This document shows positions 761 to 58,796 of a stretch of 64,000 bases of DNA, piece by piece. This stretch comes from Phallusia mammillata (Eukaryota). The translations under genes were made by a program, and so were the position numbers. How positions within the stretch are numbered: position 1 is the first letter of the stretch; every line of letters begins with the position of its first letter. The stretch is taken from NCBI GenBank assembly GCA_965637545.1, contig OZ281495.1:29078001-29142000 (forward strand), read 5' to 3'. The notes under the pieces were generated by a model, which saw only the letters and a list, made by a program, of their open reading frames with translations, made no database searches and was not told where the DNA came from.

Positions 761-1724
761 TGCAGCAGTTGGGACAAATTAGAAAGTCAAGATTTGCAAC
801 TTGATAGTTGGGTCAAATTAGAAAGTCATTATTCGCAACGTGGCAGTTTTGTTAAATTCATTTATTTTCTTTTAGGTGACCTTTGTTGCCTTTCAACCAT
901 AGTTTTCTCAGTTTGTCAAAATTTATGGGGGATTTAAGCGAAAAATCATTGTTGTATCCAACTTCAAAAGCATTGAAATCGGTCGGCGTACCAAAAATGT
1001 CACTCTGTACAATACGAAACATTTGCGAAAAAGCAAGAGGCTACGGACCTTGTACAAATGTATTAAAACTTAGCTTTTTTATTCAAGTGTTGGGTAATAT
1101 TTGAAACACTACAGACACCAAGTAACGAAATTGTATACCATAGCTTACGCGAGACATCATGTGGTAAAACATATAATTCAGATGGGTTTCACGACAATAA
1201 TGTTATGAATATAATAATAAGTTGTGTTTTAGTTCATCACAGGTCATACAACATAAAAGTCAATAACCTTATTCGTTTCAGAAATAACTGACCAAAATGA
1301 TTCATGTCAAGATATTTAGCATTGGGTGCAAACGACAAGTGAAGTTTTTAATTTTGCATTTTTTGTTTGGCGAAACTAAAGGAACCATCTTTCTCATTAT
1401 AAGTACAAGAAACGAAAACACGTTGTAAATGACAACACACTTTGTGATGAAAATTGAATTAACCATGAATTCAGGTGCTACGACATATTCAGAAAACGCG
1501 TTTAAATTGCGGTTAAAAGTCGAAAATGTGGATAAGGTAAGTGAAAACTATATCAAGCTGTTGACAACAGACGATAACTTATACACATATACGATGTTGG
1601 CATATATGTACATTCATGTAACTTTGATTTTGCTTAAATTTACTCATTTGTCCATTTTGTTGCGTTCTTGTCTTATATTTCTGTGTCGACTTGTTTCTTT
1701 TTCGGATGTCAAATTTATGACAAC

Positions 1725-4700
1725 CTAATTTTCTTTTAAAACCTTTTTGAACATGCAAGACGACTCCTCCGTACTTATAATTTCATTTTTTTGTTTCCCA
1801 GTTTCTGATTGATTGCATTTCATGTAATCTATTTGTTTCTCATGTTTGGCAAGAATCTCAAAAATTTTGGCAAGAACCTCCTTTTCTTCAAGAATTCTTC
1901 TGTGTTTCTCTTCGTTTCTTTTTACTTCTAAAGTCAGTTGCTGTACTTTCTGATCTTTTTGCTTCAAGTCTATAGTCATTTCTAGTATTTTCTGTTCATT
2001 TTGCTTTGCTTCTGCAGTCAGCTGATGTATTTTGTGTTGTTTTTCTCCCATTTCTGCTGATAGACGCTGTTTCAAATGAGCATTTTCGGTGGTTAGTTGT
2101 GCATTTCTGGCTTCCAGGGCTTCACTTTGATTTTGAACATCTTTGTTAATTAATTTTTGTTGTGCATGAGCACACGAGAGTACATTGTAAATGTGGTTAA
2201 TGGTGTCAATTAACTCTTTCCTGTATTCACCGACCAAGTCCTTGCTTCCCATCTTTGCCTCATTAAAAGCTTGCAGTATTTTTTGCTCCAGGCGCTTGTG
2301 GTTTTGGTGACAATAAAATAGCCCGTGTGTACAGTCTTCTAACGTCTGCACAACATAACAAAATTAAACAATGACAAAAATAACTGAAACAGTTTTGCAA
2401 ATAACAAACAGTTTGTAAAAACCTTTGTCATAGTAGCCTCGTAATAAGTCGCTTTTTCTTCCAAAAGTCTTTCTAGATGGGACGTTGCCACCGACTATAA
2501 AAATATATTTTGAAACACACATTCATAAGTTAAATACCGGTTGCACCAAAAGTGTAATAGTAAGAGTAAAAGTATGCTTTCCTTGTGTCATTTTACCGGT
2601 CGTTGTTTTCAGTACTAAAGTACAATCGTATTTATCGACTTTCATATTTATTTGAAACAAACCTTGCCCAGCTGTGCAGCACTTAGATCTTGATCGGTCA
2701 GCAAGTGCTTACAGCAGTTGAGGATGTGGTCATAAATTTGCTGACCGTTGACTTTAACGCTATTTAGATGAACTGGTCGCGCGTATTTCTTGATGTCATT
2801 AAATACAGTGTCCACTTGTTGTAAAAAGTTGTCACCAATACCTATTTATACACAATAAGTCGTGTTACGAATCATTACAAGATTAACTACTATAGTCGTT
2901 TTAATTATATGACTTACCAATTACTTCAATCGGTTGCGTTTCCATTTCATTTCGTCCTTTCACGCTTACATAGGGAGTGGGAAATTTTTTTATTTTGCTC
3001 CGAGTTGCTAATTTTTCAAACCCTGTTACTTTTGCCTCTTTTGACATATTTTCATCGCACGAATCGTCTCGAATAAAAAAGGACATTTCCTAATAATGAA
3101 AATGTACCTGGCCAAGTTGAAATGTTAAACAGCAAATTAAAACGAAGGTCTTCGATTCAATTTAAGAAGAAGGCGGAACTTATTATTTAAACAACCAACC
3201 TGAAGTATGGGCTTTGGCGATCCTTCATGCAAATAGCTACAAACATCCTTTAAAAACTAAAAAATGAATCCAAAAAGATATTACCTTCAAAATTTTAAAA
3301 TAGACAAATGTGCTACACTTACATTAAAATTTTCGCTAAATCCCGCTTGTATTTGTCCAGTGAAGTTTAAGATCAGGTGCGAGCTCATAAGGGTTACAAG
3401 CGTGAATATTTGGGTCAATTCCTTCTTGGGGGTTTGATCATTTAACGTTCCTTGCTGTACGTCCATCAGGTACAAAGCAACCTGCATAATTTGTGTTAGT
3501 GGTGAGCCCAGAACTATGATACAGCCATGGGGACGGGAAAATTTTTGCATGGCAGGGGGGGGGGGGGAGTGACGTATTTGTACAGTGGTTCATTAGCTAT
3601 AAATGAAAAACAGAAGAATTGCATTGCATTCATCCTGAAACACCCTACAATGTGAAAAAACTTCACACGCAGCCACACATCCATAATCACGTGTACCATT
3701 TTGTACAACCTCAAAGATTATGGAAACAAGGGCAAGTGCACCTCCTTGACGTTCCGGCGCCCTTCGTTACAGCTTCAATAAATTTCTACAGAATGTCAAT
3801 CAACCTTGCCATTAGAAGAATCGACCATCAAAGGTTTGTCCAAGATCCAGATTCCTTCAGTGTTTGATCTGTTTCCATAATTCCGCCCAAACACTGTCTG
3901 TAACTGTTCTGGTTTGAAGAATGGAAGATAATCTTTCAACCCTTTTTTCGGCATGCCCTATAAGAAAAACGTCACATCATGCACTTATCCGGGTTTTGTG
4001 TTTTTGTATGTGTGTCCCAAAACTAAACGTTAAATCAGGTAAAAGAATAAATAACAAAACAACAAAATAAACACTGTTTTAAACAAATTGGTTCGGTTTG
4101 AATTGGATTTGATGTTCTCATTAAAACGCATGTGGCGCATTTATTGCTAATTGTATCATTTTTGCTGCAGTATGAGCCTTACATTGACGTGTCAGGTCAG
4201 GCTCCACAACTGCTACTGGTACCACGTAGCCCAGTACAACCTGTGGACGATTAAATGGCTAAACAACCCTGTATGAGTGACTTGACTTACATTAACGTTT
4301 CACCCTAATTTTTTTCGTTTCTAAAGTTTTTTCATTTTCTTTCATTTTTTTCGTTTATTTTTTTAATTTTTATTTGTGCCTAAAAAGAGTTTGTGGTTAT
4401 TTGTGATTAAAACAAACGCAAGATGCACTTTATTGTTAACAATGCACTCATTTGTACCTTAACTTGGAGATGTACAAACAAGTTGAGCATGAACGATTTT
4501 CCACTTTTCCTACTCCCGCATATGGTTATGATTGATATCGGATGTCCCTCGGCATTGTCCAGCGCTGTTTTTAAACCAGATTTATCGATTTCCAAGTGTT
4601 TCTCCTTGACTCTTTTTAGTATTTGTATGGCTTTTCGATCCTCTGAAAAAGCATATAACTTGATTTAAATCAGGTGACCTCATATATTATTGTTTAATTA

Positions 4701-4923
4701 AGTTTTTTTCTTGAATTACTCCATAACTTACTTTACGTTTAAAGGAAGTTTCTTCTTTAAATTAAGCTGGACAAAAATTATTCCTAATAATTCTAGTTAG
4801 TGTAACTTTGGCTAATGCTGTAATCAAGATCACGCATTACTTGGGGTAACAAAAATTTGGGTAATTTAGGATTTATCTTACATGTAAGAGATAACGCATT
4901 TTGCTGGATTACTTACCTGCCAT
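1725..4923 (-). CDS. Atlastin/GBP-family large GTPase-like protein with coiled-coil tail, divergent class (copy M1), about 534 aa
   Basis: Exons 4923-4917, 4642-4458, 3957-3805, 3481-3323, 3256-3200, 3089-2918, 2841-2663, 2494-2423, 2345-1725. All introns are GT-AG, total 1605 nt, open frame. Motifs: P-loop GSRKSGKS, G2 NTEGIWI, G3 region MDVQQG, FFIRD. Intron positions and phases match the plus-strand paralogues. Confidence 0.85.
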
Positions 4924-4934
4924 AACTTATTCCC

Positions 4935-7900
4935 AATGAGCAACTCGTTCTTGTTCAGAAATACTTAGAAAAACCTATACACAAAACGTTTTAGTGGCCT
5001 ATTGAAGTTCAAAGTAAAAAATACGAATAAACAAACAGAACAGAATGGCACAAATAGTTTAAGTATGTAAGTTGAATTTTATCGTTGCGTGTAACCCGAA
5101 ACAAAAAACAAAAACCGATGAAATTGCCAAGGTTGAGCGTAAGACAATAGGCGCCATAAACCGCTTTAACGAAGTGTTTGACATACAGGTCAGTGCTGTA
5201 GTGAGTTTAGTCACCAATTATGCCATCTACTATTTTGCGCAATATACCTAACTTAACTTAAATTAAGACCCCGACCAAACTATTGTTGCAGCGTGCCTGA
5301 AATTGTTTGTCAAAACGCGGGACAGCCGCATAGCTTACAAACCCCAACGCAGAAAACTGTATTAATCATATTGTTTCGTTTCAAACCTAATTTGGCCTAG
5401 TCGGTCTATCACTGCTAAGTAGGATGCGGTGATAAAAACAGGAAATGGGTAATACGTTTAGCGCATAGCAATTAGCAAGTATACCCAAGCGTTAAATATC
5501 TTTTCTTAGGCCATACAATCGAACCAGTTGAAGTACTGGAAAAACTGACGTGTGAGATTTTAGCTTTGTGACCCCTGGCCTACGCTTTCTGCACAAGTGC
5601 TCAAGGATGACAGACGCTGCAAAGCCGGTGTTTGACACCTTGCATACATTCCACCATTCGTGCCGTTACGTGGCCATCACCGTTCTCGCTTCATATGCTG
5701 GCATATCAACACTGCACCTTATCTTAACTAACCTATCAAAACCAAAATCAAATCGTTATATATAACGCCTTTAATGAGCATGGCCAAATCACAGTACACC
5801 AGACCCATTGAAAAGTGTCTATCATATTTCTATATCAGTGATCGCTGGTCCGCAAATACGCTTCAGGGCTGATCCCAGTATTAAAATAGCCCGTTCACCT
5901 TGACAAACCAAAATCTGACAGACAAAGCCGCACAGTGTAAAAGATATTATACTTCCACACTAATAGGTGCTACGTCGACCAAACATGACTCACACATAAA
6001 ACGGAAACGCTGACGTGTTTGTGATTCTACATGGGAGCCACTGCGAACTGTGAATCCAAAAACAATGTATTAAGAATTTTAAACAACAAAAGACTTTCAA
6101 TGGATTCACAAAAAAGCAATCGGAGTGGAAATAAAACACAAGCCCTACTTAAGTCAGTGTTGTTTTTACAAAGTTTATACAACAGATTTTTTTAAACATT
6201 AAAGATTTTTTTAGACTTAAGTATGACGAGGTCAAGAATTAATGATTTTTGAAGACTTAAGTATGGCAAAAACAACACGGCTAACATAAAAACTTCTTGA
6301 TCAAACCAAACCCAGTCAAGCAATAGCTCTGACAGCCATAACGTATAGTTCAAAAAATATTGTACTTCTGCACTATAGGGTGCTAATATATAGGCAACTC
6401 GGTTTTGTTCAGAAAAACTTGGAAAAACCTACACACAAAACGTTTTGTGGCCTATTGAAGTTCAAAGTAAAAAATACGAATAAACAAACAGAACAGAATG
6501 GCACAAATAGTTTAAGTATGTAAGATAAATTTTATCGTTGCGTGTAAACCGAAACAAAAAACAAAAACCGATGAAATTGCCAAGGTTGAGCGTAAGACAA
6601 TAGGCGCCATAAACCGCTTTAACGAAGTGTTTGACATACAGGTCAGTGCTGTAGTGAGTTTAGTCACCAATTATGCCATCTACTATTTTGCGCAATATAC
6701 CTAACTTAACTTAAATTAAGACCCCGACCAAACTATTGTTGCAGCGTGCCTGAAATTGTTTGTCAAAACGCGGGACAGCCGCATAGCTTACAAACCCCAA
6801 CGCAGAAAACTGTATTAATCATATTGTTTCGTTTCAAACCTAATTTGGCCTAGTCGGTCTATCACTGCTAAGTAGGATGCGGTGATAAAAACAGGAAATG
6901 GGTAATACGTTTAGCGCATAGCAATTAGCAAGTATACCCAAGCGTTAAATATCTTTTCTTAGGCCATACAATCGAACCAGTTGAAGTACTGGAAAAACTG
7001 ACGTGTGAGATTTTAGCTTTGTGACCCCTGGCCTACGCTTTCTGCACAAGTGCTCAAGGATGACAGACGCTGCAAAGCCGGTGTTTGACACCTTGCATAC
7101 ATTCCACCATTCGTGCCGTTACGTGGCCATCACCGTTCTCGCTTCATATGCTGGCATATCAACACTGCACCTTATCTTAACTAACCTATCAAAACCAAAA
7201 TCAAATCGTTATATATAACGCCTTTAATGAGCATGGCCAAATCACAGTACACCAGACCCATTGAAAAGTGTCTATCATATTTCTATATCAGTGATCGCTG
7301 GTCCGCAAATACGCTTCAGGGCTGATCCCAGTATTAAAATAGCCCGTTCACCTTGACAAACCAAAATCTGACAGACAAAGCCGCACAGTGTAAAAGATAT
7401 TATACTTCCACACTAATAGGTGCTACGTCGACCAAACATGACTCACACATAAAACGGAAACGCTGACGTGTTTGTGATTCTACATGGGAGCCACTGCGAA
7501 CTGTGAATCCAAAAACAATGTATTAAGAATTTTAAACAACAAAAGACTTTCATTGGATTCACAAAAAAGCAATCGGAGTGGAAATAAAACACAAGCCCTA
7601 CTTAAGTCAGTGTTGTTTTTACAAAGTTTATACAACAGAATTTTTTAAACATTAAAGATTTTTTTAGACTTAAGTATGACGAGGTCAAGAATTAATGATT
7701 TTTGAAGACTTAAGTATGGCAAAAACAACACGGCTAACATAAAAACTTCTTGATCAAACCAAACCCAGTCAAGCAATAGCTCTGACAGCCATAACGTATA
7801 GTTCAAAAAATATTGTACTTCTGCACTATAGGGTGCTAATATATAGGCAACTCGGTTTTGTTCAGAAAAACTTGGAAAAACCTACACACAAAACGTTTTG

Positions 7901-9291
7901 TGGCCTATTGAAGTTCAAAGTAAAAAATACGAATAAACAAACAGAACAGAATGGCGCAAATAGTTTAAGTATGTAAGATAAATTTTATCGTTGCGTGTAA
8001 ACCGAAACAAAAAACAAAAACCGATGAAATTGCCAAGGTTGAGCGTAAGACAATAGGCGCCATAAACCGCTTTAACGAAGTGTTTGACATACAGGTCAGT
8101 GCTGTAGTGAGTTTAGTCACCAATTATGCCATCTACTATTTTGCGCAATATACCTAACTTAACTTAAATTAAGACCCCGACCAAACTATTGTTGCAGCGT
8201 GCCTGAAATTGTTTGTCAAAACGCGGGACAGCCGCATAGCTTACAAACCCCAACGCAGAAAACTGTATTAATCATATTGTTTCGTTTCAAACCTAATTTG
8301 GCCTAGTCGGTCTATCACTGCTAAGTAGGATGCGGTGATAAAAACAGGAAATGGGTAATACGTTTAGCGCATAGCAATTAGCAAGTATACCCAAGCGTTA
8401 AATATCTTTTCTTAGGCCATACAATCGAACCAGTTGAAGTACTGGAAAAACTGACGTGTGAGATTTTAGCTTTGTGACCCCTGGCCTACGCTTTCTGCAC
8501 AAGTGCTCAAGGATGACAGACGCTGCAAAGCCGGTGTTTGACACCTTGCATACATTCCACCATTCGTGCCGTTACGTGGCCATCACCGTTCTCGCTTCAT
8601 ATGCTGGCATATCAACACTGCACCTTATCTTAACTAACCTATCAAAACCAAAATCAAATCGTTATATATAACGCCTTTAATGAGCATGGCCAAATCACAG
8701 TACACCAGACCCATTGAAAAGTGTCTATCATATTTCTATATCAGTGATCGCTGGTCCGCAAATACGCTTCAGGGCTGATCCCAGTATTAAAATAGCCCGT
8801 TCACCTTGACAAACCAAAATCTGACAGACAAAGCCGCACAGTGTAAAAGATATTATACTTCCACACTAATAGGTGCTACGTCGACCAAACATGACTCACA
8901 CATAAAACGGAAACGCTGACGTGTTTGTGATTCTACATGGGAGCCACTGCGAACTGTGAATCCAAAAACAATGTATTAAGAATTTTAAACAACAAAAGAC
9001 TTTCAATGGATTCACAAAAAAGCAATCGGAGTGGAAATAAAACACAAGCCCTACTTAAGTCAGTGTTGTTTTTACAAAGTTTATACAACAGAATTTTTTA
9101 AACATTAAAGATTTTTTTAGACTTAAGTATGAAGAGGTCAAGAATTAATGATTTTTGAAGACTTAAGTATGGCAAAAACAACACGGCTAACATAAAAACT
9201 TCTTGATCAAACCAAACCCAGTCAAGCAATAGCTCTGACAGCCATAACGTATAGTTCAAAAAATATTGTACTTCTGCACTATAGGGTGCTA
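4935..9291. repeat. Near-identical tandem repeat, 3 x 1453 bp, followed by a diverged partial sub-unit to about 9480
   Basis: The same 65-aa ORF recurs at 5568, 7021 and 8474 (period 1453). Units differ by only a handful of bases, e.g. gactttcaatgg vs gactttcattgg and ggcacaaat vs ggcgcaaat. Confidence 0.97.
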
Positions 9292-10050
9292 CGTCAACGC
9301 CAAAAATGGAAATGCTGACGTGTTTGTGGCATGACCACCGCTCAATTTCGACAGGGAGCCACTACGAACTATGAATTTAAAAACAATGTACAAAGAATTT
9401 TCAACAACAAAACAATTTCAATGGATTCATAAAGACATTAATCATAAGTAAAATAAAACACAAGTCATACCCTAAGAAAATGCTGTTTTTGCGATTGGCA
9501 GTTCACCTGTGCAACAATTATGTATTTTACGTCATTAATCCCATGCCCAAAACGATTTGTAATATAAAATTACATTACAGACAATAGCCACAATGAATAA
9601 AACTTGTCACAACCTATATGGAGCAAAGAAAACAATTGCTAAAACTATTTTTTTTTACTTTCTTAGCAAAAATAGAACAGTAAATCCAGCGTAGAATTCC
9701 GAAAACCTACTTTTGTTACTATTAAAAAGCTGTTATTTTGGTCAAAAACAGCTACATGAATGTAGTCAGCATAATCAGACGATTGTGGTGCATTGTTTTC
9801 TGGTACGTTACCGAGTGGTGAGTGTTTTTGTTGTTGTTCTGTCGTTAAAGTGCTGTGGATTTGGAACCAAAAGTATCCAATCTGACCGCACTAAACGAAC
9901 ATTTTGATTTCTGTAAGTCTTTTTAGGTTCAACATTGCCGCTTTTTCAAGCTGTGGTCACCAGACGATATAGACGTGCACATCTTTCTAGTATAAGTGGG
10001 AACAGAAGTAGCATATATGTACATTTTTGTATCTCCAGTTGTGTTGCAAT

Positions 10051-13000
10051 TTATTCAAATATCTGTGATGTCCCGGTGTTGGTCGTGTGCTTGTCGCAAT
10101 TTTGTTCATCATGTTTTGGTATCGTTGGCATTATGGATTCATTAAATGTTGTCAAACTTTTTGAAATATTCTCCATCAACTCCGTCTGTTCCTCATTGTG
10201 TGTTTGGTTACATTTCATTTGTTCTATTTGTCCCTCATGGTTGCCTAGAATCTCATAAACCTTTCGATTCTGCATTCCCTGTTTCTTTTCCAACTCTTCA
10301 ATTTTGCGTTTTTTTTCCTTCAGTTCTATAGTAAGCCGTTGTATTTTTTGTTCTTCGTCTTTGACAGCAGTTCTCAGTTTTTTTATTGTCTCTTGGTTTT
10401 GGTTTGCGTCTATAGTCAGCCGTTGTATTTTTTGTTGGTTTTGCTCTGCGTTTTCCGCCAGTTTTTGCAGTTTTTGTTCGTTTTCTTTTCTTTCAGCTGT
10501 CAAACAAGCATTTTTGTTTTTTAGTTCTGCATTTGTAGTCATCAGTTCTTCATTTTGGTTTTGAACCACACCAAGCGAAAATTTCCTTTGTGCAAATGCA
10601 CATGACAGGACCTTATAAATGTGGGTAATGTTGTCAATTAACTCTTTCCTGTATTCTGTGACCAAACCATCACTTCCTAGCTTCGGAGCTTTGTCAAAAG
10701 ATTGTAGTATTTCTTGCACCAACCGCTTGTGGTATTGATGACAATTATAGTGGCCTTCCTTGGAGCCTTGTAAATCCTGGACAAGAAAATTAAACAATTA
10801 TTAAACTCCCACAATTTTACTCCTGTTACTTCCACCAAAGAGTACTTAAATGGCTACAGAATGGTCAAACTGTGTATGTCTTATCCCCACTGCACTGATG
10901 AGACCTTACCAGTGGAAATAGTGTGCACTGTCTGTAGCTTACTTATCATTAATTGCCTTGGTAGTTTGATACTACATTTACATAAAAAATACACCTATGC
11001 TTACCGTTGTCATAGTAGTCTCATAGTACGTCGCTTTCTCTTTCAAACGTTTGTCCAGTTGCGAAGTTGCCACCGACTAAATTTTTTTGTATTTCTGTTT
11101 AAGATAACTATATGTGCGCAAATATGAAAACGAACCTCGTTAATATCATCAATTTTCTCTGCCATCTCTCCCTTGCATTTTTCTATTAAGTCATGTCTTC
11201 CCCACTTGGGAGCTTCATCAAATTTTTGAAGGGATTTTTCCTTAAGGTGCTGACAACTGCGTTCACCTTTTTCAAAGTCTTGCAAGTTCTGCGCATTAGT
11301 ATATATAAAACGGTTTGAAAATTGTAGTTTTGATAATAAATTATGCTCACCTTATTAATAACACTTTCGTACTTTTCTACACTTTCCTCCAACAGTCTTT
11401 GTAGCTGTAAAGAGGCCATCGCCTAAAAAGGTTTTGCTTTGATACCGAATTACAATTTAAACAAGTTTCTGTAGCTACAAAAAGTAACACTTGCTACATG
11501 CAGCAACTTTTGTGCATCTATGCAACATAAATCAGGCGACCTACAGTCATAACATGACTTTTGTTTTGAATCCAAGGATTTAGGAATAATCATTTTTTCA
11601 GTCGACAAACCTTGCCCAGCTTTGCAGCACTTGGTTCTTGATCGGTCAGCAAGTGCTTGCAGCAGATCAGGGTGTGGTCATAGATTTGCTGACCGTTAAG
11701 TTCAAGGTCATTTTGTTGAAATGGTCGTGCGTTTTGTTTGATGTCATTAAATACAGTGTCCACTTGTTGTAAAAAGGTGTCACCGATACCTAATTACACA
11801 CAATGTGCGTTTAGTGGTGTTACAAATCATTTCCAATTTAAATCGCATAGATATTTTACTTATGACCGACCAAGTATTTCAATCGATTGTGTTTCCTTTT
11901 CATGTCGCCCTGTCACGCTTTTATTAGGAGTGGGAAATTTTATTATTCTGGTCCGAGTTGCCAATGTTTCAAACCCTGGTACTTTTGTCCCCTCTGCCAT
12001 ATTTTCCTCGCACGAATCGTCTCGAATAAAAAAGGACATTTCCTAACAATAAAAAAGTGTCCGAAAAGTTTGTAGTATAAAACAGCAATATAAAAACACA
12101 ATTACAAAACCACATTAGGTAATTTTAAACAACCAACCTGAAGCATAGGCTTTGGCGATACTTCATGTAAATAGCCACTAACATCTTTCAAAAACTAAAA
12201 CAAAGTAGAAGCATTAAACTAAACCAAAAACTTTTTTAGAAAATAGCTTTTACTTTGTGTTACTGAAAGTGGAAATTGACAACATGCTACACTTACTTCA
12301 AAGTTTTCACTGTACGCTGCTTGTATTTGTCCTCTAAAGTTCAAGATCAGGTGCGAGCTCATAAGGGTTGCAAGAGTAATTATTTGAGTCGATTCCTTCT
12401 TAGAGGTTGAACTATCCACCGTTCCTTGTTGTACGTCCACCAGATAAAGAGCAACCTGCATTTTTTGTGGTGATGAACCGGAAACTAATTGTCAACTGCA
12501 ATAAAGTTCAAAAGAAAGTTAATCAACCTTGCCATTTAAAGTATCAACCATCAAAGGTTTGTCCAGCATCCAGATTCCTTCACTGTTGGATGTTCTGCCA
12601 TCATTCCATCCAAACACTGTCATTAACTGTTCTGGCTTGGTGAAGGCGGAAAGGATTGCCCACCCTTTTTTCGGCATTCCCTAAGAAAAATATCGCATTG
12701 ACCAATCATGGTAAGTAATAAACTTCTTGTAAAATCCATCCTCACTAACGCTTGACTTAAGTTTCATATAAGCAACTGCAGTGAACGGGACAGATTGCGT
12801 TCTTTTGAACGCCTCGCCGAGTGCGCCGTATTCGCCAATCAGCATTACGTTTTTTTCTCTAGCTCAGAGAAACACACCACCCCAATTTTAATGGAAACAC
12901 ATTTCAAACAAAAGGAATTGGTAAATTATTAAACTGATGTCACTCAGTGTTAAAGAGCCACGCACAGAAAAATTATTGTTTTTTTAGATGCCAGAGGGTC

Positions 13001-14669
13001 ATAAAAAGGGTCATTTAATAGATGTAAGAGGGTCATAAAAACGTCTGCAGTGTTAAAATTAAAAAATCAATGTTTAGAAATACAGTTTGAAATCTAAAAC
13101 ACCGACACCCTGCGAATATTTTTACAGCTAAAATGCTAAATGTTCGCGGGAATATCGTAAAAACGGCAAGTGATTAAAATACAAGACTAAGAAATATCGA
13201 ACAATACGTTCCGCCATTTTTTTTACCTTTATATGGAGATGTACAAACACGTTGAGCATAAAGGACTTTCCACTCTTCTTGCCTCCACTGATGGTAATGA
13301 TTGATATAGGATGTCCTTCGGCATGGTTCAGTGCCGTTTTCAAGCTCAGTTTATCGAGTTGAAATTTTTTGTCCTTGCCTCTTTTAAGTATATGTATGGC
13401 TTTTCTTTCCTCTGTAGCAAACGTTAGCTTGATTATAATTTTGTTATGACGGTTGTTTACAACGTACATTGCCGTTGGAAATTAATTTCACCATCATTAA
13501 CAGATGTTGGATTTCAGCTTTAACTATATATAGGCCTTTATTTTATATTTTTCATTCCAAGATAGGGGTGGCTTTGACTAATAATTTACTTCACTTTTAA
13601 GCTACCCTCTAATACTATTGCTACGTATTTTTGGCATCACCCTCTGACGTCATAAATGCAATTCTATGTTGCGTCGTTGTAGCGAGACGTGGCCCTTGAG
13701 GTTAGACGGGGAGAGTTGGTGTTGAGCGGTGGTTCTGTCGCGACCGTTATATCTGCATTGCTTGTCTTTTATCGTTTGTACTCTTTTAATATTTTAATAC
13801 AAGTATAAATTGAGTGCTGACAAATTTCTTTCCAACAGCGCCTTTAGCTTTTCAAAGCTTTTTACCACTATAAATATCAACAAATAATAAATGTTCTGAC
13901 TAAAGAGTTATACGGTTTTCTGTAGTAAGAAATACCTTTTTCCAACGAAGTTGAAGATGTGTTTTCTTTGTAGATGTCCACCTTCTGAAAAAAACAAACA
14001 TACTAAATGTACTTTGAATTGAATTCAAAAACACATTTGTAAGCTCAACTTTTAGTTGCTTCTAGGTCATTTATAAGCCCGTGACACTATTTTTTCGCTT
14101 TTTTTCTTTTTATCTTTTCTGGGTATGCGATTTGTTCAATAGATAGTGTTTTGACTCAAAAATACGCAGCTTACTTCTGTCTGTCTGAGTCCGTTTCGAG
14201 CCGCAAGTGCAAGATTTCGTTTAGCATCTTCTTTCCGCCTTCGCAATTTGTCCGGTCTTGATTTTACTTTTTGATGAGAAGTAATTTGAATTGACTCAAA
14301 TTGACCCACACCGTCTTGGAATTCGCTGGAATATCTTGAAAGAGCCTTGTTTATCTCAGCCAACAAAGCACCGGATTGACATGCATCCGTCACCCTTTGC
14401 GCTATCTCCGATGTTTCAGCAAGGACTGTGAGAACTAGAGAGTCCCTGAGAGTCCCTCGGCGTATACGCTCGACAATAGCTCCTGTCACCTCAGTTACTG
14501 ACGCGCATATGGCGTCAACAAATCTATTTGGATTTTGAACCTTCCAGAAAAAATATCCACCCGCAGTTGCCGCTGCGGCTATAGCAAGTTGTGCAGACCT
14601 CCCATGCAATTCAATAATAATCACAGACGTATCAATTAACAATCTATCTACTGGCATTGAAACTGCCAT
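10051..14669 (-). CDS. Atlastin/GBP-family GTPase-like protein, divergent class (copy M2), with N-terminal extension and duplicated helical module, about 823 aa
   Basis: Exons 14669-14175, 13984-13936, 13411-13227, 12680-12528, 12455-12297, 12194-12138, 12042-11871, 11789-11611, 11422-11351, 11288-11136, 11076-11005, 10776-10051. Total 2472 nt, open frame, GT-AG. Motifs: P-loop GGKKSGKS, NSEGIWM, VDVQQG, FFIRD. An acceptor AG lies 2 nt before the ATG, so a further upstream exon is possible. Confidence 0.82.
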
Positions 14670-31960: not shown

Positions 31961-34900
31961 ATGACAGGTATATTTTAGCACTTATCAACATCCAATTTTG
32001 TAAATGCTGCAAATTTTGTCAATGTTTTCGACTACCTTTACAGCACATATGTTGCTATGTTACAATTTCGCGAGCTGTCCTTTTTAAAAGTACACAATTT
32101 AACAAGAAAACGTTAACGTTTAGTAAAAAATGAAGAAACCAACTTTCCTGGTGTTGATGCGATTGTTGAAGCAAAATAATTAAATGAATTAACTATTATT
32201 TAGACAAATACAACTCCGTCCAAATTCTTATCAAAGGCGCTAATGACTCATTCGAACTTAATAAAGCTGCTTTGAAAGAGGCGTTAAAGGATGCATGGGG
32301 ATATCCTGTCTCATTCATATCCATCTGTGGTGACAAGAGAATGGGAAAATCACACATTCTCAACTTATTTTTTAGTTACCTTATAGAGGTGAGTTTATTG
32401 AGTTTTTCTATTATATGAAAGGCATTTATGGCTAAAATGTAAATTCTAGTCCGAAAGAAGACGACGGTTTTAAAGATCATTTAAAACTATAATATATCTG
32501 TTAATTTGTAAACGTTCCTGAAATTGGAGTCCAAACCCCCCTCACAGATTTTCTGAGCTTACCACAAAGGGCTTGCAGCGCTGTGAGTTTAACCATTTGA
32601 TGCTATGTTGAGTGTCATTCAGACTATTGAAATGGATCTGATAAACACACGGATTACGTTACGCACGGATTTCGGTATTTTTACGACCTAAACATCCCCG
32701 TACAGTGTACGGGGGTTTATTTTCTGCTAAGTAAATCACACCATTCTATCACACCAGCTTTATTAAACCACGAATTGTTAAATGACTTTACACGACTAAC
32801 AAGCAAACAATGCGTTGAAAAGAGAACCAACAGTTCTCAATGCGGATTTTTCTCGTCACTCATGAGATCAGCTTTTCACGAAATGATGCATGTACAAGCT
32901 GTCTTCGAGTCAAAAGGAGGGGCACGAAGAAACACAGAAGGAATTTGGATTCTTGACAAACCAATTATGGTTGATACTTCGGAAGGCAAGGTTAATAGTT
33001 TCTTATTGCACTTAGGTAAAAATGCAATTAAAAGTAAGGGGCGTATGCTTACACATTGTCTTACCTTTTGTCTGTCCAAATTTGTCTAAACAACAAATAA
33101 ACTTATATTTTTAAAGAGCACATTGCATTTACCTTTGGTAATGCTTTAGTCACAAGATTTTAAAATATTTTAACAGTTCCTGTGACCATCCTAATGTTTG
33201 AGCAGGTCGGTGTCTACTTGATGGACACACAAGGAATGTTTAGCAGTCAAACCACTATGAAAGAATGTTCCCAGATATTTGCCATTGCCACGCTTATGAG
33301 CTCACATCTAATCTTTAACGTTATGAGACAAATACAAGCAAAGGATCTCGAAAATGTAGACGTAAGTTCATAAATATAAAAATGAGGCTTTACCAGACAC
33401 GGAAACTTTTTTAGCGTAGGCAACAATAAGTCAATATGTCTTTAGTCAATACTTCGTTAACAGTCGCAAAAGAGAAACAGTTTGTAAAATGTCTGCGCAG
33501 TGCTTGCTGTACTCATGTCTTGGTCGATAGATGACCTGAAAAGAATCTTATTTGTTTTGTAGTTTTGGACACAGTACGCGAAGGACTTAAACCTGCAATC
33601 AGACGATCAAACTTTTCAGGTACAATCTACCAGTTTCAATTTTGTGTTTGTTTAACGTTAACAGTTATTTATTGATTTACGTTGCTCTAAATCCATTGCA
33701 TGTAAAAAAATTAGAATTTGCTCTTTCTCATCCGGGACTTTGACTGTTGCGATTATGGTTTCGGAATCCAAGCAGGGGAACGTTATCTTCAGGAGGAGTT
33801 AAAAGAATCTGACGACAAAACGGCGACAGTGAACGAAAATATCAGAAACATAAGAAACGTGTTTTCGAGTGTAAAAGCATTTGCAGTCCCAGCACCCCCA
33901 AATAGATGCGACTTTGAAGACAGATTGGTGCATAATCAAACCAACTTCACAAGTAAGGAATTTAATAGAATTAGATAAAAAAGCCGTTTGTACCATTGCT
34001 ATTTTAAATAGATTTGGTTTCAGTTACAGAAGTATTCTTGAGTATACGATGTCTATACATAATCTTTAGTTCGCCTGTCACTAATTCAAGTCTAATAGAA
34101 GTTCTAAAAACGGTATAAGGCATCTCTTTACTTTCTATACCCCAATAAAGCGTTGCCAATTGGCCTGAAAATTGAGCCCTAACCCGGTCCGTACCCGACC
34201 CGAACCCTCGGCCCGAACCAGGCTCGAACCAGGCTCGAATTAGGCCCGAGCCCGGCCCGAACCCGAATCTTTTATGAGAAGTCCGTTTAGGCCCGAAAGT
34301 TTGATTGCCAGGCGTATACATTGAAGCCTTAGAAAAGGCTGAGAAAACATACAATTGGTCTTTAATAAGGCTTTTTAGGGCTGTTTGACATTAGGTCAGG
34401 TCAAGCGACTGGCTATAGCTGATAGAGAGAATAAAGTCATGCCCGAATCAACCTTGATTTTTCAGTTGGAGGGTATTTTGTACGACAAGTCAAAGGCCTG
34501 TTTGAGTATCTTCTGGAAAGCATAAGTCCCCTGACCATAAACGGAAATCCGATGAGCGGGGAGCGACTGTACGACTACGTGTTGAAATGCAGCGCAAATC
34601 TGCTGAGCGACAAAGTACCAGAATTATTTCCTTTAAGTGAGGTAAATTACAGGCTGCAGTGTTTGTAGATAGGTTCGCACAAGTGAAGCACTAAATATAC
34701 AGCATAAAAAATGTTATTGACAACAGGCGATTCCAGTAAAAAACAACTGGTTTTGTGTTATATTCTGCAGCCGGTTTTTAAATTCCATCTTGACAAGCTT
34801 GTGAAACAGGAAAGAGCCAAATACAAGAAAATTATAAAGAAGGTAAGAACTATATATCGAAAGTCATTTACATGTTTGAGTAACTTTAAGCAATTTTTTC

Positions 34901-35706
34901 AATCTTATACTGCAGGCTAGGTATACCTTAGTGAAGTTCAACACTTCCTGTGTGATAATAATTCTCTTATGAACCAAACAAAACTCGTTATACTCTCTTT
35001 TCTGCATAATTGACAGGCGATGGACACCAATGAATGCTCGGTTTCTGATCTTTACAAATATCACAATGATCAACTCCTTGAGGCACTGGGAAGATTTGAC
35101 AAAGTTGTAAAGTTGAGTGATAATTTGATCTTGGACTACAGGCGTAGGCTGGAGTCTGACATTGCCGACACTTATGAAGTTCTTTCTTCTTACTTTACCC
35201 AGAAGTTGGAGCAGAAAGACTCCGAGAGCAGGCGAGAAGAAGAGGCAAAGATTGCAAAAATGCGGGAGGGCCAACTGAGTGAGATGATAAAGAGGCAGGA
35301 AGAACAGATAAGAGAAACGGCTACAAAACACGCCAGGGATGCAGAGGAGATGAAGAAGCGCCTTGAAGAACAGGAGAAGCGCTTCCAGGAGGCAGAAGAA
35401 ACAAGAAAAAAGGAAGTGGAGGAAGCAAGCAGGCTGCTTGAAGAAAATCAGAGGCTGCACAAAGAGGCGGAAATTTTCAGAAAAATGGAGGCTGCCGAGG
35501 CAAAAGCTAGATATGAGGAGCAAAAGCAACTGATGCAAAGGATGGCGGATGACAACTTAAAACAGGCGCGGGAGGCAAGGAATAACTTCCAGAAGATGAA
35601 GGAGCGCTTTAAGGAAGAAGAAGAACTGCTAAAATCTGACCCTAAAAACACGTGTCCAAAATCAAGCAACAATCAGGAAATGACAAAGCAATGCAGTAGA
35701 AAATAG
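31961..35706 (+). CDS. Atlastin/GBP-family large GTPase with coiled coil (copy A), about 580 aa
   Basis: Exons 31961-31967, 32204-32388, about 32823-32990 (acceptor uncertain), 33206-33361, 33563-33619, 33715-33952, 34466-34641, 34771-34842, 35017-35706. Motifs GDKRMGKS, RRNTEGIWI, MDTQG, FLIRD. Ends QCSRK*. Confidence 0.78.
34140..34320. repeat. GC-rich cccgaa/cccgac-repeat element, probable MITE remnant, in a gene A intron
   Basis: Clustered cccgaacc/cccgaccc units. A shorter related piece lies at about 26110-26165. Termini not resolved. Confidence 0.45.
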
Positions 35707-46900: not shown

Positions 46901-48519
46901 TGGGAAGATTTGACAAGGTTCATAAGTTCGGCAGAGATGATGTGATTATGGACTACAGAAATACGCTCAAGCTGGACATTGTCGAAATTTACAACGTCCT
47001 CTCAACCTATTTTACCCAAAAGTTAGAGCTGAAAGACTCCGAGAACAAGCGAGAGGAAGAGGCAAGGATTGCCAAACTAAGGGAAGATCAATTGGGCGAC
47101 ATGGTACAGAGACAGGAAGATCAAATGAAAGAAACAGCTGCAAAACACGCCAGGGATGCAGAGGAGATGAAGAAGCGACTTGAAGAACAAGAGAAGCGTT
47201 TTCAGGAAGCAGAAGAACAAAGAAAAACGGAAACGGAGGAAGCAAGAAAGCTGCTGGAAGATCAACAGAGGCTACACAAAGAAGCGGAAATCGCGCGAAG
47301 CATGGAGGCTGCCGAGGCAAAAGCTCGGTTTGAGGATCAAAAGCAGAAGATTCAGAAAATGGAAAATGACAATTCGAAACAGGCGCAGGAGGCACGAAAG
47401 AACTTCCAGCAGATGGAGGCGCGTCACAGGCGGGAAGAACAAGAAAGAAAAGCTGACGCAGAAAAGGCGCGTCAAAATTATGAGCAACAAATGAAAGATT
47501 ACAAAACGATGCAGGAGAAAAAAGAAACAGAGGCTAAATCAGCGAGAGAACAGCAACAGAAAATGTGGGACCAGCAAAAAGCTGCTGACGATCGTCGATA
47601 CGAGGAGGCCAAAGCAGCACAAGCAAGAACAGAAAAGCAATTACAGGAAATGCGACAAAAACTGCAAAATCACCCGAGGCGTGTAAGTATTTTTTCATCA
47701 CATATGGGTTTTTTTAATTCTAAACTGCAAATTGCAGTAAATGTTATACTGCTTTTTTTGTAAACATGTTGTTCAATCACGTTTGTAGAGCTCTTCTGAC
47801 AAATGTAATTATATTCCGACGTTTCGACGTCTCATATAGGTCGTCTTCATCAGGGTAGATAACACTGAATGCGACTAGTACAGTGCATTCACGCGTTATC
47901 ACAAGGCCGCCGTATTGATATTAATGCGGCGTCTGTTGTGGCCCGGGAGCCTGACTATAGGAAAAGATTATTTCTTGAGTCATGGAATATTCACCAACGG
48001 GGTAACACAATGAACATCAAAACAGACGTGATGCTTTCAACGTGCTACAGGCACCTCCTTAAAGATTCTCGCGCGGTGCTTTCGTTGCGTTGTGACGTGC
48101 TTGCGTTCCATTATTTTTCCTTTGTTTATCGTGCACTGTCCTCGTTGCATTCAGTTTTATTTACCCGGATGAAGACCAGTGCTGGATTAACCATTAGGCA
48201 AAGTAGGCACGTGCCTACAGGCCAGTCAAAAATCCAGGCCACAAAATTATGACAATGATTAGGCAACACTGATAATTCTTTTTTTTCTTTGGCAACCCTG
48301 ATTTTCGGGCCACTTATAAAATGTGCCTACTTCCCAGCAGACCCTTAATCCGGCAGTGATGAAGACGACCTGTACATTTCTCAGAAGAGCTATACAAACT
48401 TGATATTATGCCTTGATATGGCAGCAAATAGCTTATATGTTGGTCAATAGTCAAAAACCTTAATTATACTTGCTTAACTTGTTTTCCAGAAACGAAAGGA
48501 TAAGTGCATCATCTCATGA
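43982..48519 (+). CDS. Atlastin/GBP-family large GTPase with coiled coil and CaaX box (copy C), about 640 aa
   Basis: Exons 43982-43988, 44399-44583, 44851-45000, 45178-45333, 45590-45646, 45758-45992, 46093-46271, 46385-46456, 46831-47682, 48490-48519 (1923 nt, open). G1-G4 intact. Ends KRKDKCIIS*. Confidence 0.9.
47781..48399. mobile_element. Penelope-like retroelement remnant (GIY-YIG C-terminal fragment, inverted ends, hammerhead core) in the last intron of gene C
   Basis: Plus-strand peptide HALSQGRRIDINAASVVAREPDYRKRLFLESWNIHQRGNTMNIKTDVMLSTCYRHLLK resembles the end of PLE GIY-YIG endonucleases. Inverted repeats at 47781-47807/48373-48399 and 47838-47852/48357-48371. Hammerhead core on the minus strand at 47853-47818. 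Absent from the 139 bp equivalent intron of gene D. Confidence 0.75.
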
Positions 48520-56226: not shown

Positions 56227-57139
56227 ACCCGTTTTTGCTTGGCGTATGAAGACTACTTTTTATTGTCCTTGTTCTACTTTTAGTGTGACTACCCATGTCA
56301 GTTTTTATGGCAATGTTTTATGTGCTTGATGTTAGTAATTCTGCCCCGCGCAAATATCTTTCATATTTCTTACCATTTCTTCGATCAAACAAACAATAAC
56401 TTTTTATGTGGCAAATAAAAACCTAGACCAAACTTTTTGGGCTTTGTAACTATTTTTATGCGTTTACTCTCTCATTGGCTATGGTGAAACTGTTGTTTTA
56501 TGTAATGTGGCATAATAAAAACATTGTATGGTTTCGCTTTGCCACATCTAAATGAGCTACCTTGCGTTGTCATAACTTGCATTGTCATTAAATGTTGTGT
56601 GTTGCTTATTTTTTATTTTTTTGTAACATGACCTTGATTTGCGATTGTTGCATTCATGTCTTTCATGGGCTTTACTATGACTTAATAACTAAAATTTTGA
56701 ACACTTTCAAAAATACCTTTGAATGCGGCAAAATTAAACTATGCTGAGCACCATGTTTAACATGCATATGCCTATATCGTGCACACAAAAACGCACAGAC
56801 AATAGTACACATATCAAACGCTGTAATCATCCATGCTCACCAATATATAGCACGAAGAAACTGATCAGTTGGTTTTGTGTATTAAAACTTGAAATCTCCC
56901 CTTTGTTTAAATTAAACGGACCAAGGTCAGAGCAATGATACTATACAACACGATCGGACACTTCTGTCTTAACCAATCAGATGTTTCTGCCGTGTCACGC
57001 ACCACTGAGATTACGTTACGGACAGGTAGTTTCCTTCCGCAAAGTGCAGCCTGTTGGTCAAGTCTTACAATTTTCGTGCTCTTTTGCCAATTTTGCTCGG
57101 TTAAACGTTCAGGGATCTTTGATTATCTGTTATTTAAAA

Positions 57140-58796
57140 ATGTCAAAGCATTGTTGCATTCCGGGGTGTGCTGGGAAACGCCCGAACCCTTTGTATAGCG
57201 TACCAGCGAAAAGGTTTTGTCCATCTGACAAAAAGGACTGGGCTAAAAAGTTGGAATGCATTATTTTGTCACTGCGAGCTGATCGTGATATTCATGATTT
57301 GTTTTTACGAGACAGTGTCAAAATATGTGACAAACACTTTGCTGAAGAGGATTTTGTGCAAGGTAAGTCTGTTAAAACTAGGTACAAGGAGTTTACAGAG
57401 CTGTATTGCATAATTTTAGACAATCAGGTGACCGACCTAACATATTTTACAGCCAAGAAGCGAAAGGTGTTAAGGACAGGGGCAATCCCAATCTTTCACA
57501 TGCCGAAAAAATTATATTCCAGTACTGCAGTTGAGCGTAGACCACAAAAACACCGAGTTTTTGTAGAAAAATGTTTATACAAAACATTTGCAACATTTGT
57601 CAGTGCAGCAAAGCAGTACGTGGCCACATCAAACTCCTGGAAGGTTAAAAACGTGTCAGATTCCAATATACACATATCCAAATCAAGTCAATATGACCAG
57701 GAGGAGTATTCAGTGTATGTTAATGTAAATATGGAAATTGATGTTCATCATTTTGGATGGCCAGGAAAAGTTACTCTTGAAGTTAAAGAAAACACAGTTC
57801 ATCAGCTTTTGATGTTTGTGGAAAATTTAAATATCTGTAAGGGAATACAATGTGGTGACCAGGAAAATGAAACAAAGCTTGCAGTCAAGCAAATACTCAC
57901 GAGCCCATGCAAGCCATTTGAAAATAGTCCACCAATGATAACACATTATGCAACCAGGTTAGAGTCTCAGTAGTTACAAGTTGATTTGCTTGAGCACAGG
58001 TGTGTTTATTCACAAACGATTGTTTTTTCCTCAGAAATACTGATTGCATTTTATTTGTGGAGAAGGGCCATGACATATGTAAGAAGTGCAAAAATGAAGC
58101 AGGGACAATTCAAAAAAGGATAAAAGAACGCGTCCGTTACAGAAAAGTTGTATTGCACCAACCACTACAAAAAGTTTCAGTGTCCAGATCATTAGGTTCC
58201 AGAGTAAAGGAAACATTAGTAGATAAACAGGAAAAGTAAGACTTATGTTTATTTAATTGAGGGCACTGACAGCAGTAACAAGTTAACATTAATCAAGAAA
58301 GTATCTAAAGACTAGTATGATAGAAATGTATATTTGCAGAATATGTCATTTACAAGCCCAAATTGATGATCTGTTACAAAACCCTGCAAAACAAATAACT
58401 TTAGAAAAGGATGCGCATTATGATATTCAACAATGTTTACTGACAGGCCAGTATTTTTGAAGAGGTTTATTCTGTTTAGCTGAAGTGTGAAAAAATCAAT
58501 TCATATATCTGTATTTTAGAGAAGGAAAATGGTACAATTGACAAATTTCATGATCTCTTTTGGTCTCAACAAACAAAATTAAATCTAATTGAAAAAAAAT
58601 CCCACCGCTTTCATCCAGATTTAATCAAGTTAGTACAATTTTTGAAAAATATATGTATTGAGTATAGCAGTAATGTATATACATCATGTATAGGTACTCA
58701 TTAATGCTGTATGGAAAGGGCCCAAAAGCTTACAAAATGTTACAGGATACTGGCTTGCTTGTCTTGCCTTCTCAACGAACTCTTAGGCGATATCGG
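57140..58796 (+). CDS. THAP-domain P-element-like transposase, N-terminal half only
   Basis: Exons approx. 57140-57362, 57453-57957, 58035-58235, 58341-58447, 58520-58628, 58696-58796 (one donor would be GC; internal junctions tentative). THAP motif MSKHCCIPGC...W...CDKHF...LRTGAIPIF, then LFWSQQ...RFHPDLIKYSLMLYGKGPKAYKMLQDTGLLVLPSQRTLRRY. No RNase H-like catalytic region follows. Confidence 0.75.

What the first reader, a model, noticed from the sequence alone, without database searches (positions are those of the whole stretch)
1725..13411. Two intact but probably hydrolysis-impaired GTPase paralogues (pseudo-GTPases)
Both minus-strand genes keep open frames and all splice sites but share catalytic changes. 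P-loop position 4, the arginine finger in atlastin and GBP1, is Lys (GSRKSGKS, GGKKSGKS vs GDKRKGKS in the plus-strand copies). G3 DTQG becomes DVQQG by a one-codon insertion (159 vs 156 nt exon). M2 has Ser at the G2 Thr. The RD-motif exon is 63 nt shorter. Retention of these changes in two diverged genes suggests selection for a regulator, decoy or sensor role, analogous to GMS versus GKS immunity-related GTPases (analogy only).
Basis: partly seen in the sequence, partly recalled or inferred. Interest (0 to 1): 0.75.

Follow-up and report, generated by a model that had tools for sequence, protein, structure and literature searches.

The report
Divergent atlastin-like GTPase pair, altered catalytic site
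A sea squirt (Phallusia mammillata) keeps two intact, selectively maintained copies of an atlastin-like GTPase that have lost the family's catalytic arginine and normal switch-II spacing but kept the GTP-binding residues, so they are candidates for slow or non-hydrolysing regulators, which has not been tested.

Summary
All five sequence claims hold. M1 (4923-1725) and M2 (13469/13411-10051), both on the minus strand, have GSRKSGKS and GGKKSGKS where the plus copies B-D have GDKRKGKS. That Arg aligns with atlastin-1 R77. Both have DVQQG for DTQG through a 3-nt insertion (exon 159 vs 156 nt). M2 has Ser at the G2 Thr. The RD exon is 172 vs 235 nt.

The window is from the ascidian Phallusia mammillata. 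Copies A-C match deposited "atlastin-2-like" proteins.

M1 and M2 are real genes. All splice sites are GT-AG. The exons carry no indels although the introns carry many. dN/dS between M1 and M2 is 0.40 (0.31-0.52), and the two copies change at equal rates. An RNA contig splices a start exon (ATG at 4923) onto the M1 P-loop exon.

The pair sits inside the local clade on a very long stem (1.19 vs tips of about 0.2). GKS, D, QG and RD are kept. The Arg finger, the switch-I WR, the switch-II Thr and a 22-residue stretch after RD are changed in both.

"Retained under selection" is supported. "Hydrolysis-impaired" is plausible but unproven, because Lys fingers exist and Sey1p is active with Ser at that position. 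No DVQQG-type protein was found among 1.84 billion representatives. M2 expression and its 5' end are unresolved.

The parts
4917..4975 (-). M1 first exon: 5' UTR plus ATG GCA G (ATG at 4923-4921), donor GTAAGT
   Evidence: RNA contig X2 record 6 joins 4917 to 4642 across a GT..AG intron of 274 nt. An in-frame stop lies two codons upstream of the ATG.
4458..4642 (-). M1 P-loop exon (185 nt); GSRKSGKS at 4517-4494, Lys at the Arg-finger position 4508-4506
   Evidence: Pfam GBP partial hit; the RNA contig covers 4500-4642 with no mismatches
3805..3957 (-). M1 switch-I exon (153 nt); G2 Thr at 3861-3859; family WRGG changed to RNYG
3323..3481 (-). M1 switch-II exon (159 nt); DVQQG at 3463-3449
   Evidence: Pfam GBP 22.0 bits
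3200..3256 (-). M1 57-nt exon, missed at first
   Evidence: homologous exon is present in deposited proteins P0001 and P0017
2918..3089 (-). M1 RD (G4) exon, 172 nt; RD at 3071-3066; 22 residues missing directly after RD
   Evidence: the plus-copy exon aligns with atlastin-1 residues 212-279
1725..2841 (-). M1 exons 2841-2663, 2494-2423 and 2345-1725: helical middle domain and Q/K/E-rich coiled-coil tail, stop at 1727-1725
   Evidence: RNA contigs X1 and X2 cover 1827-2259; no transmembrane segment
13227..13469 (-). M2 P-loop exon (acceptor at 13411; in-frame ATG at 13469 continuous with it); GGKKSGKS at 13286-13263
12528..12680 (-). M2 switch-I exon; Ser (AGT) at the G2 Thr position, 12584-12582
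12297..12455 (-). M2 switch-II exon (159 nt); DVQQG at 12437-12423
12138..12194 (-). M2 57-nt exon
11871..12042 (-). M2 RD exon (172 nt), RD at 12024-12019, weak donor GTCGGT
11136..11422 (-). M2 extra in-frame module: 72-nt exon-like piece (11422-11351) and 153-nt piece (11288-11136), both with AG/GT sites. They are diverged copies of the following 72-nt exon and of the start of the last exon. Whether they are spliced in is unknown.
10051..11789 (-). M2 exons 11789-11611, 11076-11005 and 10776-10051 (stop at 10053-10051)

Best explanation
M1 and M2 are functional protein-coding genes. They form a fast-diverged 'M-type' offshoot of the local Phallusia mammillata cluster of soluble atlastin-like GTPases (G domain, helical middle domain, coiled-coil tail).

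Before M1 and M2 split, their common ancestor underwent a burst of change concentrated on the catalytic and G-interface elements:
- the P-loop Arg finger became Lys;
- the switch-I WRGG motif was lost;
- switch II changed from DTQG to DVQQG, and the FD after it changed;
- 22 residues after the RD motif were deleted.

The residues that hold GTP and Mg were kept: G..GKS, G2 Thr/Ser, the G3 Asp and Gly, and RD. Since the split, both copies have been held by purifying selection.

The most likely working mode is inferred, not shown. The proteins still bind guanine nucleotide but no longer perform the fast, dimerisation-stimulated hydrolysis of atlastin and GBP. They would then act as long-lived GTP-bound partners or regulators, possibly pairing through the G domain or the coiled coil with the lipid-anchored plus-type copies next door.
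For: Gene reality:
- All introns are GT-AG.
- There are 0 indel columns in the seven exons from the P-loop exon to the 72-nt exon, against 9-368 gap columns per intron.
- M1-M2 dN/dS is 0.40 (CI 0.31-0.52), with dS 0.61.
- Relative rate is 22 vs 24 unique changes, p = 0.88.
- In a neutral simulation the frame stays open in < 1/2000 runs at 10% substitution.
- A spliced RNA contig joins 4917|4642, and exon-only coverage spans 1827-2259.

Origin: M1 + M2 lie inside the Phallusia clade with 100/100 support, on a stem of 1.19 against tips of 0.18-0.21.

Active site:
- Of 50 positions near-invariant in 10 other family members, GKS, D, QG, RD and core positions are kept.
- R->K, WR->N, T->V plus a Q insertion, FD, and the deleted block containing an invariant Gly are changed in both copies.
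- The Lys is kept through a synonymous difference, AAA vs AAG.
- The Arg aligns with ATL1 R77.

Literature:
- ATL1 R77A binds GTP and dimerises but hydrolyses slowly (PMC4576867).
- Mutation of GBP1 R48 abolishes hydrolysis but not dimerisation (PMC5084822).
- The deleted block aligns with ATL1 residues ~219-240, whose R239 is at the dimer interface (PMC4436774).
- Precedent: the Arabidopsis pseudo-GTPase GBPL1 sequesters active GBPL3 (PMC10473214).
Against: - No biochemical or structural test was possible.
- Lys can act as an activating finger in P-loop NTPases (PMC6310460), and Thr to Ser is conservative.
- Sey1p is an active GTPase with Ser at the finger position (PMC4576867), so the Arg is not obligatory in this class.
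- M1 also has an Arg one position earlier (GSRK).
- Omega of 0.40 is weaker constraint than in the plus copies C-D (0.22).
- M2 expression was not tested. RNA support for M1 comes from low-depth contigs of one study.
- No orthologue from another species was available to show long-term retention.
Confidence: 0.5

Rival explanations
1. M1 and M2 are ordinary active GTPases that use a variant catalytic arrangement. The P-loop Lys (or a bound cation) replaces the Arg finger, and the longer switch II still reaches the gamma-phosphate. They are just a divergent subfamily with its own partners.
For: - All nucleotide-binding residues are retained and under selection.
- Arg or Lys fingers both occur in P-loop NTPases (PMC6310460).
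- Sey1p is active with Ser at this position (PMC4576867).
- The Lys is conserved through a synonymous change.
Against: - Five separate catalytic or G-interface elements changed together on one long branch.
- The DxxG spacing is near-universal in this family: 10 of 10 other members have DTQG.
- No DxxxG member was found in the exhaustive search.
Confidence: 0.3
2. M1 and M2 no longer bind nucleotide at all and serve as scaffolds that use only the fold and the coiled coil.
For: - Switch I and switch II are remodelled, and 22 residues next to the base-binding RD motif are deleted.
- Similarity to atlastin falls to 13-15 bits for the P-loop and G3 exons, against 27-49 bits for copy D.
Against: G..GKS, the G3 Asp and Gly, RD and the P-x-P..V guanine-cap positions are identical in both copies after dS 0.4-0.6. 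This would not be expected if the pocket were unused.
Confidence: 0.12
3. One or both are decaying or unexpressed pseudogenes that look intact by chance.
For: - Neither is represented among deposited Phallusia proteins.
- The M2 exon-4 donor is weak, and its 5' end and expression are unproven.
- Omega is higher than in the plus copies.
Against: - Open frames over 531-566 codons, no exon indels, omega 0.40 with CI below 1, and equal rates in both copies.
- M1 is spliced in RNA.
Confidence: 0.05

Closest known systems
Atlastin-1/-3 (human) and Drosophila atlastin G domains (PDB 3q5d, 4idn, 6b9f, 5vgr, 3x1d)
   Same: They are the best structural relatives by sequence, with the same GxxxxGKS, switch and RD layout. 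The plus copies align over the P-loop, G3 and RD exons at E 1e-5 to 1e-12.
   Different: - M1/M2 have Lys for R77, DVQQG for DTQG, and no WRGG.
- They lack about 22 residues aligned with ATL1 219-240.
- They have no transmembrane hairpin (max hydropathy 1.36), and a coiled-coil tail instead.
- M-type exons score only 13-15 bits against atlastin.
Plus-strand paralogues B, C, D of the same cluster (deposited as Phallusia mammillata 'atlastin-2-like', P0017 and P0001)
   Same: Same exon structure and phases, same clade (100/100), and same domain order.
   Different: - 35-40% identity in the G domain.
- The plus copies keep R, WRGG, DTQG and the full RD exon.
- Their tails are longer and E/R-rich, and end in a CaaX box (C) or a short amphipathic helix (B). 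No such ending is evident in M1/M2.
Arabidopsis GBPL1, a pseudo-GTPase of the GBP-like family that sequesters active GBPL3
   Same: A catalytically degenerate paralogue within the same GBP/atlastin superfamily that regulates an active paralogue (PMC10473214). It is the closest precedent for the proposed role.
   Different: It is from a different kingdom and has an independent origin. Its inactivity and partner binding were shown experimentally, whereas neither is shown here.
GMS-type immunity-related GTPases (IRGM class) versus GKS IRGs
   Different: - IRGs are p47 GTPases, not GBP/atlastin-type.
- Their change is Lys to Met inside GKS, whereas M1/M2 keep GKS.
Sey1p/RHD3 and BmAtlastin-n
   Same: - Sey1p is an RD-class fusion GTPase that lacks the Arg finger (Ser instead) yet is active (PMC4576867).
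- BmAtlastin-n is a soluble atlastin-like protein with a coiled-coil middle domain and an antiviral effect (PMC4926086).
   Different: - Sey1p is membrane-anchored with a long stalk.
- Motif states of BmAtlastin-n were not examined here.
- Neither is reported with a DxxxG switch II.

Membership tests
GB1/RHD3-type (GBP/atlastin/Sey1) large GTPase G domain, Pfam PF02263 | Profile match to the GBP N-terminal domain | tested here: met
   The M1 G3 exon scores 22.0 bits (cutoff 21.1). The P-loop exon scores 16.3 bits, which is below the cutoff because only single exons could be scanned. Deposited copies B and C carry PF02263.
GB1/RHD3-type (GBP/atlastin/Sey1) large GTPase G domain, Pfam PF02263 | P-loop GxxxxGKS | tested here: met
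   GSRKSGKS and GGKKSGKS
GB1/RHD3-type (GBP/atlastin/Sey1) large GTPase G domain, Pfam PF02263 | G4 motif RD instead of NKxD | tested here: met
   FFIRD in both copies. RD is described as class-defining in PMC4576867.
GB1/RHD3-type (GBP/atlastin/Sey1) large GTPase G domain, Pfam PF02263 | G3 motif DxxG | tested here: not met
   DVQQG in both copies, with one extra codon. The 10 other family members compared all have DTQG.
Atlastin/GBP catalytic mechanism | Internal arginine finger at P-loop position 4 (ATL1 R77, GBP1 R48) | tested here: not met
   Lys in both copies; the alignment to ATL1 is; the role of the Arg is described in PMC5084822.
Atlastin proper (ER fusion GTPase) | Two transmembrane segments and a C-terminal amphipathic tail after a three-helix bundle | tested here: not met
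   No hydrophobic segment outside the G-domain core (max KD 1.36 and 1.08). The tail is a Q/K/E-rich coiled coil.
Local Phallusia soluble atlastin-like cluster (copies A-D) | Shared exon structure and phases, and monophyly with B, C and D | tested here: met
   Exon lengths are 185/153/159(156)/57/172(235)/179/72 with the same phases. The clade has 100/100 support.
PseudoGTPase (pseudoenzyme) | Demonstrated lack of GTP hydrolysis and/or nucleotide binding | not testable with these tools
   Only motif states are available. A structure model could not be made because the spliced protein has no reference.
IRG GMS subfamily | P-loop GMS in place of GKS in a p47 IRG fold | tested here: not met
   GKS is retained, and the fold is GBP/atlastin-type.

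The most novel reading that the evidence does not exclude
The M-type proteins are GTP-binding but catalytically silent partners. They would heterodimerise through a remodelled G interface with the neighbouring lipid-anchored atlastin-like GTPases and gate their membrane assembly. That would be an invertebrate-chordate counterpart, of independent origin, to the plant GBPL1-GBPL3 and mouse IRGM-IRG regulator/effector pairs.
Probability: 0.2. Interest if true: 0.6.

Novelty: new variant of a known kind. Interest (0 to 1): 0.38.

Why it matters
The arginine finger and the DxxG spacing are treated as fixed features of the atlastin/GBP catalytic machinery. Here a natural pair has replaced both, also lost part of the G interface, and yet stayed under selection for a long time.

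This gives a ready-made natural experiment on which parts of the dimerisation-coupled GTPase cycle can be dispensed with.

If the proteins prove inactive, regulator/effector pairing of large GTPases would have arisen a further time, in a tunicate with a large expansion of this family. If they prove active, they define a Lys-finger, DxxxG variant of the mechanism.

Tried and rejected
- My first M1/M2 models placed the P-loop exon donor 6 nt too early. At that position M2 would have had AT instead of GT. Comparison with the plus copies moved it to the AAG|GT site, which is intact in both.
- I missed a 57-nt exon until the deposited protein P0001 showed it.
- A word search with the M1 G3-exon ORF found no candidates, because of the length filter and because no exon ORFs are in the database.
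- The profile search of 1.84 billion representatives gave only 11 hits, none of DVQQG type. This is weak evidence of absence: the query has 53 residues, and coverage of ascidian genomes is unknown.
- The word search with copy C found only the three Phallusia plus-type proteins as close relatives.
- Tandem Repeats Finder missed the 1453-bp array because its period limit is 500. A self-BLAST found it.
- A paper search for the PDB entry name LOC432253 found nothing.
- Structure prediction and whole-protein Pfam or PDB searches of M1/M2 were left out. The spliced proteins have no reference, and long sequences may not be typed.
- The 177-aa ORF at 14669-14139 could join M2 only through an AG two bases inside the usual acceptor. 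I did not adopt that model.
- A possible extra M1 3' exon ending in CTQC (1375-1316) is speculative.
Full report
**What is there.**
The window holds six paralogues of a GBP/atlastin-type large GTPase. Two are on the minus strand (M1, M2) and four on the plus strand (A-D).

Pfam assigns the M1 P-loop and G3 exons to the GBP N-terminal domain, PF02263. Among solved structures the plus copies are closest to atlastin-1/-3 and Drosophila atlastin.

Exact or near-exact matches to deposited proteins identify the organism as the ascidian Phallusia mammillata:
- P0001, 'atlastin-2-like', is copy C.
- P0017 is copy B.
- P0003 is copy A.

**Gene models.**
I built exon models from paralogue homology, splice sites and the deposited proteins.

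M1 has nine coding exons:

| Exon | Coordinates |
|---|---|
| start | 4923-4917 |
| P-loop | 4642-4458 |
| switch I | 3957-3805 |
| switch II (G3) | 3481-3323 |
| 57-nt exon | 3256-3200 |
| RD (G4) | 3089-2918 |
| middle domain | 2841-2663 |
| 72-nt exon | 2494-2423 |
| last | 2345-1725 |

- The product is 534 aa, and all introns are GT..AG.
- M2 has the same layout from 13411 to 10051. Its exon-4 donor (GTCGGT) is weak.
- M2 has an in-frame ATG at 13469 that is continuous with its P-loop exon.
- M2 also has an additional in-frame 72 + 153 nt module with its own splice sites (11422-11351, 11288-11136). It is a diverged copy of the following exon pair.
- Homology between the two loci stops exactly at the P-loop exon acceptor, so the 5' exons and promoters differ.

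**The observation.**

| Feature | M1 | M2 | Plus copies B-D |
|---|---|---|---|
| P-loop | GSRKSGKS | GGKKSGKS | GDKRKGKS |
| G3 motif | DVQQG | DVQQG | DTQG |
| G3 exon | 159 nt | 159 nt | 156 nt |
| G2 residue | Thr (ACT) | Ser (AGT) | Thr |
| RD exon | 172 nt | 172 nt | 235 nt |

- The Arg of the plus copies aligns with the Arg of atlastin GAFRKGKS, R77.
- The G3 codons are GAC GTA CAR CAA GGA, against GAC ACA CAA GGA in the plus copies.
- The shorter RD exon removes about 22 residues directly after RD.

I compared the M pair with ten other family members: copies B-D plus flatworm, nematode, oomycete and other sequences. Fifty positions are near-invariant in those ten.
- Both M copies keep G..GKS, the G3 Asp, Gln and Gly, RD, the P-x-P..V guanine-cap positions and the core helix.
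- Both have changed the Arg finger, the Arg of the switch-I WRGG motif, the switch-II Thr, the Phe-Asp after the G3 Gly, and the block after RD that contains an invariant Gly.
- The deleted block aligns with atlastin-1 residues ~219-240. R239 in that stretch is described as lying at the dimer interface (PMC4436774).

**Are they real genes?**
- The seven exons from the P-loop exon to the 72-nt exon have no indel columns between M1 and M2, and 78-87% identity. The introns between them carry 9-368 gap columns and 45-75% identity.
- Pairwise dN/dS is 0.40 (bootstrap CI 0.31-0.52; dS 0.61). It is similar in the G domain (0.38) and the tail (0.37). The plus pair C-D gives 0.22.
- At sites where B = C = D, M1 alone changed 22 times and M2 alone 24 times (p = 0.88). 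Neither copy is decaying faster.
- Random substitution of 10% of sites left the M1 frame open in none of 2000 trials.
- Contigs of two runs of one study lie only on M1 exons (1827-2259). One contig joins 4975-4917 to 4642-4500 across a GT..AG intron. The two DNA-like runs have the unspliced sequence.
- That joint confirms the predicted acceptor, reveals the start exon (ATG GCA G|GTAAGT), and covers the Lys codon without mismatch.
- M2 expression could not be tested, because only one read-laying run was available.

**Origin.**
In a maximum-likelihood tree of G domains, M1 + M2 fall inside the Phallusia clade with B, C and D (100/100). Their stem is 1.19 changes per site, against tips of 0.21 and 0.18 and branches of 0.02-0.31 for B-D. 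The pattern is a burst of change before the M1/M2 duplication, followed by constraint. The Lys is kept through a synonymous difference, AAA vs AAG.

**Relatives elsewhere.**
A profile of the two G3 exons was searched against 1.84 billion representatives. It found 11 proteins, the best being plus-type copy C, and none with the extra switch-II residue. The word search with copy C found only the three Phallusia plus-type proteins as close relatives. M-type proteins therefore seem to be undeposited. Coverage of ascidian genomes is unknown, and the query was short.

**Mechanism.**
Shown:
- intact, constrained genes, one of them expressed;
- nucleotide-binding residues kept;
- catalytic and interface elements replaced.

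Inferred:
- In atlastin and GBP1 the P-loop Arg swings onto the gamma-phosphate when G domains dimerise.
- Mutation of GBP1 Arg48 abolishes hydrolysis but not dimerisation (PMC5084822).
- ATL1 R77A still binds GTP and dimerises but hydrolyses much more slowly (PMC4576867).
- With this Arg gone, switch II lengthened, switch I altered and an interface stretch deleted, the M-type most likely binds GTP without the fast dimer-stimulated turnover. It would then act as a long-lived GTP-form partner or regulator.
- A regulator role has a precedent in the same superfamily, the pseudo-GTPase GBPL1 that sequesters GBPL3 (PMC10473214).

Against a firm call:
- Lys fingers are common in P-loop NTPases (PMC6310460).
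- Sey1p is active with Ser at this position (PMC4576867).
- Thr to Ser is conservative.

I put impaired hydrolysis at about one half, a still-active variant at about 0.3, a non-binding scaffold at about 0.1, and pseudogenes at about 0.05.

**Comparison and novelty.**
The genes belong to the GBP/atlastin G-domain class and to the local Phallusia soluble atlastin-like cluster. They are not atlastins proper, because they have no membrane hairpin. They fail two class features, the Arg finger and DxxG. They are not GMS-type IRGs, because GKS is kept.

This is a new variant of a known kind: a catalytically divergent paralogue beside canonical paralogues. It is of moderate interest, and its value depends on biochemical tests.

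**Limits.**
- Whole-protein family scans, structure prediction and fold searches of M1/M2 were not done, because the spliced proteins have no reference.
- No N runs occur in the window.

Noticed in passing
window 4940-9291: A head-to-tail array of three 1453-bp units, 99.2-99.7% identical, lies between M2 and M1. Its first unit overlaps the 5' part of the M1 first exon (4940-4975). The ATG and the donor lie just outside it. It is either a very recent triplication or an assembly effect.
   Followed up: partly
window 14139-14669 (minus strand): A 177-aa ORF upstream of M2 starts with ATG and has good phase-0 donors (GTAAAA, GTAAGC) near its end. Pfam gave nothing significant, and there is no paralogue elsewhere in the window. 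It could join the M2 P-loop exon only through an AG two bases inside the usual acceptor. Another note of this scan calls it TRADD-N-like.
   Followed up: partly
window 11136-11422 (minus strand): M2 holds an extra in-frame 72 + 153 nt exon-like pair. It is open, has AG/GT sites, and is strongly diverged from the exon pair that follows it (dN about 0.5). M1 has no counterpart. The same 72-nt-plus-long-exon module is reported as multiplied in another gene of this genome.
   Followed up: partly
window 32204-35706 (copy A) and protein P0003: Copy A has GDKRMGKS, and its acceptor for the switch-I exon looks lost. The deposited transcript-derived protein starts inside the switch-I exon, so it lacks the P-loop. 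It is probably an N-terminally truncated or decaying copy.
   Followed up: partly
window 48478-48519, and the ends of P0001 and P0017: The plus copies end in small extra exons. Copy C ends with a basic stretch plus the CaaX box CIIS. Copy B ends with a short amphipathic-looking peptide. No equivalent ending is evident for M1/M2.
   Followed up: partly
window 1316-1375 (minus strand): Downstream of the M1 stop there is a short open piece with a good acceptor that ends in ...VVCTQC. It would be in frame with a phase-0 donor at 1743 inside the last M1 exon. It is a speculative alternative prenylatable end with no RNA support.
   Followed up: no
window 4210-4244: A 35-nt stretch in the intron after the M1 P-loop exon has very high word depth in the DNA-like runs and loose ends on both sides. 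It is probably part of a dispersed repeat.
   Followed up: no
window 56981-57973 (plus strand): A 330-aa ORF with a THAP domain (Pfam 25.2 bits) lies just downstream of copy D. It is probably transposon-derived.
   Followed up: no
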